Assembly (NCBI RefSeq): GCF_021869535.1
Contig: NW_026262734.1
Span: 91,202,001 to 91,266,000, forward strand
Reading direction: 5' to 3'
DNA length: 64,000 nucleotides
From: Mytilus californianus
Taxonomy: Eukaryota
A model generated the notes under the pieces. It was not told where the DNA came from. It saw only the letters and a program-made list of their open reading frames with translations, and searched no databases. The stretch's first letter is position 1, and each line of letters opens with the position of its first letter. Positions 29,908-31,312 of the stretch are shown here, piece after piece. The position numbers and the translations under genes were made by a program.

Positions 29908-30088
29908 AAAGATCATAACATGTCATTTTTCATATCAGACCCTTTATCGGCCCTCGTTCATGATATCAGCCCTCGAGCCTACGGCTCTTGGGCTGATATC
30001 ATGACCTAGGGCTGATACGGCTCGAGGGCTGATACCATGAACGAGGGCCAATAAAGGGTCTGATATGAAAAATGCCATGTAATAATCT
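29908..30088. mobile_element. Foldback MITE in PGAM5 intron 1
   Basis: CATTTTTCATATCAGACCCTTTATCGGCCCTCGTTCATG pairs with CATGAACGAGGGCCAATAAAGGGTCTGATATGAAAAATG. Confidence 0.8.
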
Positions 30089-30174
30089 ATACTTCCTACC
30101 AAACATGATAAAATTCATAGGGCCTGTAGAGGGCATCTGTATATCATTTAACAATTATTTTGTACATTTGTAAG

Positions 30175-30640
30175 TGTGATGGGATTGCTTCCCTTAGTAT
30201 ATGTAGTAGACACTTAGCCAGCCATACGTGGTTGAGCTAAGGAAGTACTTCTTTAACTCAGTCGGTTAAAGCGCTGCCTTGTAACACAGATGTCCTGGAG
30301 GAGACAAAGTGATTTTGTAATATGAATCATGCTCTCTCAGTCTGGTTACATTTGGCGCCCAACTAAAAAAACCACGGTGGTTAGAGAGGATTTCTAGCCA
30401 GGGTATTTGGTGTTTGAGTCATAATGGTATCATGACTTTTGAAGTGGGGAAGTGTGATGGGATTGCTTCCCTTAGTATATGTAGAAGATAGTAGATGCTT
30501 GGCCAGCCGTAAGCAGGTAAGTGGTTGAGCTAAGGAAGTTACTTCTTTAGCTCAGTTGGTTTTAAAAAGCGCTGCCTAGTAACACAGAGGTCTCGGGTTC
30601 GAGTGTGATTTTGTAATGAAAATCATGCTCTCTGGTTACA
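30175..30640 (+). mobile_element. TRIM (miniature LTR retrotransposon) with tRNA-like LTRs, Helenus/TRIMp3-like
   Basis: LTRs TGTGATGG...GGTTACA at 30175-30350 and 30453-30640; PBS TGGCGCCCAAC 30353-30363; PPT GAAGTGGGGAAG 30441-30452; 4-bp TSD TAAG at 30171-30174 and 30641-30644. Confidence 0.9.
30541..30604 (+). pseudogene. tRNA-Thr-derived segment inside the 3' LTR of the TRIM
   Basis: A box TAGCTCAGTTGG, anticodon arm CTGCCTAGTAACACAG (AGT), B box GGTTCGAGT; no 3' acceptor strand, so not a tRNA gene. A decayed copy is in the 5' LTR. Confidence 0.7.
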
Positions 30641-31312
30641 TAAGTCTAATTTTACTGAATGGTTTTCAGTAATATTGTACATGATGTAACTGGAGTGAAT
30701 GTAAAGAAACAAAGTTATCCTTATACGTGTCTCTTTGTCGAACTCCCATAGGAAATAAAATCTTCCGTGGTTTCTACTACTCATTTAAAGTAGCACAATA
30801 CAAAGATTTTTTCAGCCCCAATCAGACAACTTTCAACTGATGTAATTTCTTTCCTCCAGCTCTAAAATTCATAAATGAGGAACCAAAAGAAAGAAGAAAG
30901 ATTAATCTTTCAAATGGTGAAAATTTTATTATTACATAATTATCTAGGAGCTAATTTCATTTAAAACTACATTTCCATGACAATAATGTATGTGTCACAA
31001 TTGAATAAATAAGGATCTTCCTATTTGAACCTCAATATCATTCACACATGTACCATGGGGATACTTCAGGATTGGCCTTTAATCATAAAACAATTAGGTT
31101 TTGTCCAGTGAGAAAGCATTCAATTTCAGCAATTCTAAATATATAAAGAAAATGCACACCCTATGCATCAAAAACCAGATCTGGCGGGAGAAGTTATATC
31201 ATTATTGACAAGCTGCTGTAAGTCAGTTGCTACTGATATGGTCAAAACTCCGCCCACCTTGATAAACATCACCCATTAATGATCTCAGAAGTTTAATTAC
31301 ACATTGCATTTA

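What the first reader, a model, noticed from the sequence alone, without database searches (positions are those of the whole stretch)
30171..30644. 466-bp TRIM whose LTRs carry a tRNA-Thr-derived Pol III module
Seen: TG...CA LTRs of 176 and 188 bp, a PBS, a PPT abutting the 3' LTR, a 4-bp TSD and only ~100 bp of internal sequence. Each LTR has a CTTCCCTTAG/CTAAGGAAG stem followed by a tRNA-like A box, a Thr anticodon loop (TGT in the 5' LTR, AGT in the 3' LTR) and, in the 3' LTR only, an intact B box. Established: TGGCGCCCAAC is the tRNA-Lys(CUU) primer site; plant Cassandra carries 5S RNA in its LTRs, and tRNA-bearing TRIMs with 4-bp TSDs in animals have been described as Helenus/TRIMp3 (from memory). 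Inference: a Pol III-driven LTR parasite primed by Lys tRNA but promoted by a Thr tRNA relic. Whether this family is already catalogued cannot be told here.
Basis: partly seen in the sequence, partly recalled or inferred. Interest (0 to 1): 0.72.

Follow-up and report, generated by a model that had tools for sequence, protein, structure and literature searches.

The report
Decayed mussel Helenus TRIM copy
This is a real but old, broken copy of Helenus-1, a miniature LTR retrotransposon of mussels whose repeats carry a tRNA-like RNA polymerase III promoter module. The class and this very family were published in 2024, so the finding is correct but ordinary.

Summary
A 466-bp element lies at 30175-30640, with TG...CA LTRs of 176 and 188 bp and a 102-bp interior. 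The interior starts with an 11-nt tRNA-Lys(CTT) primer site and ends in a polypurine tract, and the element is flanked by a TAAG duplication.

It belongs to a genome-wide family with roughly 700 candidate places. Of 30 two-LTR copies analysed, 23 have perfect 4-bp duplications, and two copies have identical LTRs.

LTR and interior match by eye the published Helenus-1_MyCo/MyGa sequences (Kojima 2024, PMC10886601). That paper already describes bivalve Helenus with a tRNA-like LTR module, Lys primer site and 4-bp duplications, so the family is catalogued. Two earlier follow-ups of this scan reached the same verdict on other copies in this genome.

The window copy is dead:
- LTR divergence is K2P 0.10 with 8 indels, and more than half its CpGs are lost.
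- The B box is deleted in the 5' LTR.
- The T-arm is truncated and an extra T4 run sits in the 3' LTR.

The 'AGT' anticodon is a private mutation. The Thr assignment is weak, and the module is not a functional tRNA.

One extra: a 26-nt palindrome at the module's 5' edge is conserved across mytilid Helenus families.

The parts
30171..30174 (.). 5' target-site duplication TAAG
   Evidence: Identical to 30641-30644. 23 of 30 family copies have perfect 4-bp TSDs.
30175..30350 (+). 5' LTR, 176 nt, TGTGATGGG...GGTTACA
   Evidence: 89.9% identical (gaps excluded) to a young family LTR from L004.
30234..30259 (+). 26-nt palindrome GAGCTAAGGAAGT|ACTTCTTTAACTC, spanning the upstream sequence and the 5' edge of the tRNA-like module.
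   Evidence: Inverted repeat I3. 12 of 13 pairs are kept in this LTR and 93.7% of cells pair across 71 family LTRs. It is the hairpin chosen by the MFE fold of a young LTR.
30247..30309 (+). Decayed tRNA-like module of the 5' LTR. A box TAACTCAGTCGG at 30254-30265 (G10>A). Anticodon-like loop CTTGTAA at 30278-30284. The B box is removed by a 13-nt deletion.
   Evidence: Pairwise alignment to a young copy. No Rfam tRNA hit at E<=10. ARAGORN finds nothing.
30313..30316 (+). T4 run downstream of the module (candidate Pol III terminator)
   Evidence: Its position is conserved in the family. The 13 young copies each have one T4 per LTR, about 31 nt before the LTR end.
30351..30452 (+). Internal domain, 102 nt, non-coding
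   Evidence: 90% identical to the interior of L004. Same length as published Helenus-1_MyCo-I. No ORF.
30353..30363 (+). Primer-binding site TGGCGCCCAAC
   Evidence: Complementary to the last 11 nt (with CCA) of this genome's own tRNA-Lys(CTT), which ends ...ACGTTGGGCG and sits in a 43-copy array. Listed in the tRNA-Lys-CTT group in Kojima Fig. S2C.
30441..30452 (+). Polypurine tract GAAGTGGGGAAG abutting the 3' LTR
   Evidence: The family state is GAGGTGGGGGAAG.
30453..30640 (+). 3' LTR, 188 nt
   Evidence: K2P distance to the 5' LTR is 0.097, with 8 indel events.
30541..30604 (+). Decayed tRNA-like module of the 3' LTR. A box TAGCTCAGTTGG at 30548-30559. An insertion creates TTTT at 30560-30563 in the D loop. 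Loop CTAGTAA at 30576-30582 (private T>A). B box GGTTCGAGT at 30596-30604, followed by a 14-nt deletion of the T-stem 3' half and the acceptor 3' strand.
   Evidence: Alignment to a young copy. CTAGTAA is in 1 of 71 family LTRs.
30609..30612 (+). T4 run downstream of the module in the 3' LTR
30641..30644 (.). 3' target-site duplication TAAG

Best explanation
Window 30175-30640 is an old, inactivated insertion of Helenus-1. This is a non-autonomous terminal-repeat retrotransposon in miniature of mytilid mussels, catalogued as Helenus-1_MyCo / Helenus-1_MyGa by Kojima (2024).

Shown:
- Two LTRs, a PBS complementary to the host tRNA-Lys(CTT) 3' end, a PPT and a 4-bp TSD, with no coding capacity.
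- Each LTR contains a full-length but degenerate tRNA-like segment. In intact family members its A and B boxes have canonical tRNA-gene spacing (+8 and +52), and a single T4 run follows it.

Inferred working of the family:
- TFIIIC/TFIIIB use the internal A and B boxes, so Pol III starts near the 5' edge of the module in the 5' LTR.
- Some polymerases read through that LTR's minimal T4 and stop at the T4 of the 3' LTR.
- This gives an RNA with the tRNA-like segment as terminal repeat (R).
- A Gypsy-type partner's reverse transcriptase and integrase, primed by tRNA-Lys(CTT), copy and insert it with 4-bp TSDs.

This particular copy can no longer do so:
- The 5' LTR has lost the B box and carries an A-box mutation.
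- The 3' LTR module is truncated and carries a premature T4.
- The element shows CpG decay.
For: - Anatomy.
- Family size: at least 44 full-length matches scored out of 682-745 candidates.
- Family structure: 30 two-LTR copies, 23 with perfect 4-bp TSDs. LTR K2P ranges from 0 (L081, L085) to 0.20, and the window copy is at 0.097.
- Published match: Helenus-1_MyCo (LTR 182, interior 102, total 466 bp, TSD 4) and Helenus-1_MyGa. Their deposited sequences share the termini, palindrome, A/B boxes, T4, PBS and PPT.
- tRNA likeness: the Rfam tRNA model aligns end to end (positions 1-71) to a young LTR at 18.1 bits, with a perfect T arm.
- Motif frequency in family LTRs: A-box core in 50 of 71, B-box core in 50 of 71, CTTGTAA in 59 of 71.
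- Primer: the host tRNA-Lys(CTT) 3' end is the PBS complement.
- Decay of the window copy: one search shows the deletions, and CpG count is 9 against 21-25 in young copies.
Against: - No transcript evidence.
- The tRNA match is below Rfam's gathering score (18.1 against 29 bits). ARAGORN calls a tRNA in only 6 of 59 LTRs.
- The T4 lies between R and U5, so read-through must be assumed. The total T4 count per element is not below shuffle expectation.
- No autonomous partner was identified.
- The match to the published sequences was read by eye, not computed.
Confidence: 0.92

Rival explanations
1. The family is an ordinary Pol II-transcribed TRIM. The tRNA-like segment is only a passenger, a tRNA-SINE that once inserted into an LTR, and has no promoter role.
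For: Kojima proposes origin by SINE2 insertion into a TRIM LTR and admits Pol III use is unvalidated. The module sits in mid-LTR with about 67 nt upstream that could hold a Pol II promoter. The T4 directly after the module would stop Pol III before the PBS unless it is read through.
Against: A and B boxes, their spacing and the T arm are the best-kept parts of the LTR in this genome. They are shared by divergent mytilid families whose other LTR parts differ. The acceptor and anticodon stems are allowed to decay. That pattern is expected for promoter selection, not for a neutral passenger.
Confidence: 0.2
2. The LTR modules are working tRNA-Thr genes that the element spreads, so the element expands the tRNA repertoire.
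For: The anticodon-like loop CTTGTAA reads Thr(UGU). Kojima notes that tRNAscan-SE predicts tRNA-Thr for seven bivalve Helenus families.
Against: Even in young copies the anticodon stem and most of the acceptor stem do not pair. The Rfam tRNA score is 18 bits, below the 29-bit threshold. ARAGORN rejects 53 of 59 LTRs. The genome has its own large tandem arrays of canonical tRNA-Thr(TGT/CGT).
Confidence: 0.02
3. It is not an LTR element but a local tandem duplication or a dimer of a tRNA-derived SINE.
For: Two direct repeats about 280 bp apart carry tRNA-like sequence. Three-repeat tandem forms exist elsewhere (L009, L012, L018, L030).
Against: TG...CA termini, a PBS exactly after the first repeat, a PPT exactly before the second, and 4-bp TSDs at dozens of independent loci. 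The tRNA-like part lies in the middle of the repeat, not at its 5' end, and there is no A-rich or LINE-like tail.
Confidence: 0.01

Closest known systems
Helenus-1_MyCo and Helenus-1_MyGa (Mytilus coruscus / M. galloprovincialis; Kojima 2024, Biology 13:119, PMC10886601, Data S1/Table S1)
   Same: - Size plan: LTR about 182, interior 102, total 466 bp, TSD 4 bp.
- Same termini (TGTGAC...CCGGTTACA).
- Same palindrome, A box, CTTGTAA loop, B box and T4.
- Same Lys-CTT PBS followed by TAAAAAA, and same PPT GAGGTGGGGGAAG.
   Different: The window copy is a degraded individual insertion: CpG>TpG/CpA changes, a 13-nt and a 14-nt deletion in the modules, and several small insertions. It is about 90% identical to young genomic copies in aligned columns. 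The species of this genome was not determined.
Cassandra (plant TRIM with 5S rRNA in the LTRs; Kalendar et al. 2008, as summarised in PMC10886601)
   Same: A TRIM whose LTRs carry a small-RNA gene relic with an internal Pol III promoter and terminator. Tandem LTR-interior-LTR arrays occur.
   Different: Cassandra uses a 5S (type 1) promoter rather than a tRNA (type 2) promoter. It occurs in plants, has 5-bp TSDs, and its Pol III transcription has experimental support, unlike Helenus.
Ajax (nemertean TRIM with a 5S-derived promoter; Kojima 2024)
   Same: An animal TRIMp3 concept.
   Different: Ajax has a 5S-derived segment, a Leu primer and 5-bp TSDs.
biv-TRIM (Satovic et al. 2019, PMC6934838)
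   Same: A TRIM of bivalves that includes Mytilus, with tandem and solo forms.
   Different: biv-TRIM has no canonical PBS, and no tRNA-like LTR module was reported for it. It is an unrelated family.
tRNA-derived SINEs (SINE2)
   Same: A tRNA-like head with A and B boxes as a presumed Pol III promoter, and a possible source of the LTR module.
   Different: SINEs have the tRNA head at their 5' end, a LINE-related or A-rich tail and no LTR, PBS or PPT. They are mobilised by LINE machinery.

Membership tests
Helenus (TRIMp3, Kojima 2024) | Short (<~1.3 kb) non-autonomous element with two LTRs and no coding capacity | tested here: met
   466 bp, LTRs of 176 and 188 nt, interior 102 nt, no ORF of 40 aa or more.
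Helenus (TRIMp3, Kojima 2024) | tRNA-like sequence with box A (TRGCY..YGG) and box B (GGTTC) inside the LTR | tested here: met
   Family level: the Rfam tRNA model aligns over positions 1-71 at 18.1 bits to a young LTR, and A-box and B-box cores are each in 50 of 71 LTRs. Window copy: the A box is intact only in the 3' LTR, and the B-box core is present only in the 3' LTR.
Helenus (TRIMp3, Kojima 2024) | PBS next to the 5' LTR, complementary to a tRNA | tested here: met
   TGGCGCCCAAC starts 2 nt after the LTR. It is the complement of the 3' end plus CCA of this genome's tRNA-Lys(CTT).
Helenus (TRIMp3, Kojima 2024) | PPT next to the 3' LTR | tested here: met
   GAAGTGGGGAAG ends at 30452 and the LTR starts at 30453.
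Helenus (TRIMp3, Kojima 2024) | 4-bp TSD in animal Helenus | tested here: met
   TAAG/TAAG here. 23 of 30 genomic two-LTR copies have perfect 4-bp TSDs.
Helenus-1_MyCo/MyGa family | Sequence similarity to the deposited LTR and internal consensus | tested here: inconclusive
   Read by eye from Data S1: the same motifs in the same order over the whole length. Not computed, because published letters could not be passed to the tools. Indirect support: the window copy is about 90% identical to genomic copies, whose interiors differ from Helenus-1_MyCo-I at only a few positions.
TRIMp3 (functional definition) | Transcription of the element by RNA polymerase III from the LTR module | not testable with these tools
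Also unvalidated in the literature.
Functional tRNA-Thr gene | Cloverleaf with paired acceptor and anticodon stems, scoring above the Rfam/ARAGORN thresholds | tested here: not met
   18.1 bits, below 29. 53 of 59 LTRs are rejected by ARAGORN. The window copy has no hit at all.

The most novel reading that the evidence does not exclude
In mytilid Helenus families a 26-nt palindrome is centred exactly where the tRNA-like module begins: 13 nt of upstream sequence pair with the module's first 13 nt, including the start of the A box. Its arms tolerate G-U pairs. Its central tetranucleotide stays self-complementary although it differs between families (GTAC, GATC, TCGA, ATAT). The most novel reading not excluded is that this is a selected RNA element of the Pol III transcript. 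It could be a dimerisation or packaging hairpin, or a strand-transfer aid at the U3/R border, that lets a Pol III RNA be accepted by a Gypsy partner's machinery. It would replace the lost acceptor stem of the tRNA ancestor.
Probability: 0.12. Interest if true: 0.45.

Novelty: already known. Interest (0 to 1): 0.12.

Why it matters
As an instance it matters little. It is one more decayed copy of a catalogued repeat, useful mainly for repeat masking and for not mis-calling tRNA pseudogenes in mussel genomes.

The family is of some general interest. TRIMp3 elements combine a Pol III promoter with the LTR-retrotransposon life cycle. This genome holds copies with identical LTRs and intact A box, B box and T4 (L081, L085), which would be good substrates for the still-missing experimental proof of Pol III transcription.

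The conserved palindrome at the module's 5' edge is not discussed in the 2024 description. It could bear on how such RNAs are recognised.

Tried and rejected
1. Rfam scan of the window copy and ARAGORN found no tRNA hit, so this copy is too decayed. Only a narrow scan of a young copy gave the sub-threshold full-length tRNA alignment. A 14-kb scan at E<=1 missed it.

2. Isotype test against this genome's own tRNAs gave Thr(TGT) 68%, Thr(CGT) 67%, Lys(TTT) 64-67% and the others 63% or less. Only 7 tRNA types were available. This is too weak to prove a Thr origin.

4. Autonomous partner: the pattern TACA-N1-3-TGGCGCCCAACG gave 58 sites against 0 in the control. None could be inspected, and I did not try to fetch them another way.

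5. T4 avoidance: young copies have exactly one T4 per LTR and almost none elsewhere. The total equals shuffle expectation (27 observed, 26.7 expected), and the copies are not independent, so there is no statistical support.

6. This is uninformative. The preference for the palindrome rests on the MFE fold and on cross-family reading.

7. biv-TRIM was considered and rejected as a different family.

8. All tests used natural copies.

9. The first tRNA-Lys pattern had a wrong spacer and found nothing. It was corrected.

Full report
**Observation**

- TAAG (30171-30174) precedes a 176-nt repeat (30175-30350) that begins TGTGATGGG and ends GGTTACA.
- A 102-nt interior follows (30351-30452). It begins TT-TGGCGCCCAAC and ends in the purine run GAAGTGGGGAAG.
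- A 188-nt second repeat follows (30453-30640), then TAAG again (30641-30644).
- The two repeats align over their whole length, with 87% mean column identity. K2P distance is 0.097 with 8 indel events.
- There is no ORF of 40 aa or more inside the element.
- The PBS motif occurs once in the 64-kb window, and no other copy or solo LTR is present there.

**Is it a family?**

A search of the window's own genome (1.65 Gb, 175 contigs) returned 44 scored full-length matches out of 682 candidates. A second search with a younger copy gave 43 scored matches out of 745 candidates.

I annotated the fetched copies individually.
- Of 30 two-LTR copies, 23 have perfect 4-bp target-site duplications of different sequence.
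- LTRs are 177-186 nt and interiors 99-114 nt.
- The PBS is (T)TTGGCGCCCAAC and the PPT is GAGGTGGGGGAAG.
- Four loci are three-LTR tandem forms.
- LTR-LTR K2P distance ranges from 0 (L081, L085: identical LTRs) to 0.20. The family has therefore been active over a long time, and probably recently.
- The window copy, at 0.097, is among the older ones.

**The tRNA-like module**

In young copies the segment starting about 68 nt into the LTR aligns end to end with the Rfam tRNA model (positions 1-71). It has a perfect T arm (CCGGG-TTCGAGT-CCCGG), an A box at +8 and a B box at +52.
- The score is only 18.1 bits, against a gathering threshold of 29, because the anticodon stem and most of the acceptor stem do not pair.
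- ARAGORN accepts 6 of 59 LTRs, mostly with aberrant anticodon loops.
- Across 71 family LTRs the A-box core is intact in 50, the B-box core in 50, and the loop CTTGTAA in 59.

It is therefore a tRNA-derived promoter-like relic, not a tRNA gene.

I also compared it with this genome's own tRNAs, recovered from tandem arrays. It is closest to tRNA-Thr(TGT) at 68-69%, but tRNA-Lys(TTT) is nearly as close at 64-67%. 'Thr' therefore rests mostly on the UGU triplet.

**State of the window copy**

I aligned it to a young natural copy.
- The 5' LTR has G10>A in the A box and a 13-nt deletion that removes the B box.
- The 3' LTR keeps the A box and GGTTCGAGT. It has lost the next 14 nt (T-stem 3' half and acceptor 3' strand).
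- The 3' LTR has also gained a 4-nt insertion that creates TTTT in the D loop, and it carries two further insertions upstream.
- Its 'AGT' is a private T>A change: CTAGTAA is in 1 of 71 family LTRs.
- CpG count is 9, against 21-25 in young copies. Most lost CpGs are now TG or CA.
- The Rfam scan finds no tRNA in it even at E<=10.

This copy is a fossil.

**Primer**

The genome has a 43-copy array of tRNA-Lys(CTT) genes ending ...CCCCACGTTGGGCG. With CCA added, the last 11 nt are the exact complement of the PBS.

**Comparison with the literature**

[quoted passage not shown] Animal Helenus make 4-bp TSDs. The paper proposes the collective name TRIMp3 and lists Mytilus galloprovincialis, M. coruscus and other Mytilidae as hosts.
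- Table S1 gives Helenus-1_MyCo as LTR 182, interior 102, total 466 bp, TSD 4.
- The deposited Helenus-1_MyCo and Helenus-1_MyGa sequences show, in the same order, the termini, the CTTCCCTTAG segment, the palindrome, A box, CTTGTAA loop, B box, T4, Lys PBS followed by TAAAAAA, and the PPT seen here.
- Fig. S2C lists Helenus-1_MyCo-I under tRNA-Lys-CTT.

The younger genomic copies differ from the published interior at only a few positions.

The family is therefore already catalogued. From this match I infer that the genome is that of a mytilid mussel. Two earlier follow-ups of this scan reached the same conclusion for other copies in this genome. biv-TRIM of Satovic et al. 2019 is a different family without a canonical PBS.

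**Mechanism**

What is shown is the structure. What is inferred is the following.
- Pol III initiates near the module's 5' edge, using the internal A and B boxes.
- The tRNA-like segment up to the single T4 acts as R.
- Polymerases that read through the 5' LTR's minimal T4 terminate at the 3' LTR's T4.
- A Gypsy-type partner supplies reverse transcriptase and integrase. Kojima finds PBS similarity of animal Helenus only with Gypsy elements.

In 13 young copies there is exactly one T4 per LTR at a fixed place, and one stray T4 in all. This fits the inference. However, the total is what shuffles give (27 against 26.7) and the copies are related by descent, so it is not evidence.

Kojima also states that Pol III use is not validated.

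**The stem**

CTAAGGAAG is equally complementary to the adjacent CTTCTTTAG. Together these form a 26-nt palindrome, GAGCTAAGGAAGT|ACTTCTTTAGCTC, whose centre coincides with the module's first base.
- The MFE and centroid folds of a young LTR choose this hairpin, together with the T arm and pairing of the LTR termini (z = -3.0).
- Within the family there are no double changes for either stem.
- Between families the palindrome is kept with compensatory changes. The Helenus-2-type copies of this genome read GAGTTAGGGAAGA|TCTTCTTTGGCTC: 13 of 13 pairs, five of them G-U, in dozens of copies.
- The published Helenus-3_MyGa and Helenus-1_MoPh have TC|GA and AT|AT centres, with 13 of 13 and 12 of 13 pairs (by eye).
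- The upstream CTTCCCTTAG arm is not recognisable in Helenus-2_MyGa or Helenus-1_MoPh.
- A small subfamily with an unpaired centre (GC|AC) also exists.

The 2024 paper does not mention a palindrome, hairpin or Helenus terminator. I record this as a side observation with an uncertain function.

**Verdict**

The object is a decayed member of a published family, so novelty is 'already known' and interest is low.

Noticed in passing
window 30234-30259 and 30527-30553; L013, L081, L085 LTR positions 55-80: A 26-nt palindrome is centred on the first base of the tRNA-like module. It is conserved with compensatory centre changes in Helenus-2-type copies of this genome (GA|TC) and in published Helenus-3_MyGa (TC|GA) and Helenus-1_MoPh (AT|AT). 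Its G-U pairs suggest a sense-strand RNA structure. It is not mentioned in Kojima 2024.
   Followed up: partly
window 29910-30088: A MITE-like foldback repeat lies about 85 bp upstream of the TRIM, with 70-nt arms that are 93% complementary. This copy has a 36-nt internal tandem duplication. There are at least 1170 candidate copies in the genome, typically about 157 bp. It gives spurious sub-threshold miRNA-precursor hits in Rfam.
   Followed up: partly
G000:C132:2.77-2.85 Mb; C110:65.55-65.69 Mb; C110:103.75-103.81 Mb; C88:102.86 Mb: The genome has very large head-to-tail arrays of tRNA genes. Thr(CGT)+Gly(CCC) units repeat every 705 or 2488 bp. About 120 Thr(TGT) copies repeat every 916 bp, with Cys(GCA) also found in the fetched array loci. 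43 Lys(CTT) copies repeat every 1135 bp.
   Followed up: no
L009, L012, L018/L019, L030: Three-LTR tandem Helenus forms (LTR-interior-LTR-interior-LTR). In two of them (L012, L018) the whole array is flanked by a perfect 4-bp TSD, as expected from unequal LTR recombination after a single insertion.
   Followed up: no
L081 (G000:C154:32701276-32701731) and L085 (G000:C121:4484826-4485281): These Helenus-1 copies have identical LTRs and intact A box, B box, loop and palindrome, which suggests recent activity of the family in this genome.
   Followed up: partly
genome-wide, 58 sites: LTR-like ends TACA followed by 1-3 nt and an extended tRNA-Lys(CTT) PBS (TGGCGCCCAACG). The commonest form is TACA-AA-TGGCGCCCAACG. 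These are candidate Lys-primed LTR elements, possibly including the autonomous partner. They were not inspected.
   Followed up: no
L017:475-539: A sub-threshold SECIS_1 match (28.1 bits against a gathering score of 35) lies in the flank of a Helenus copy. It is probably chance.
   Followed up: no
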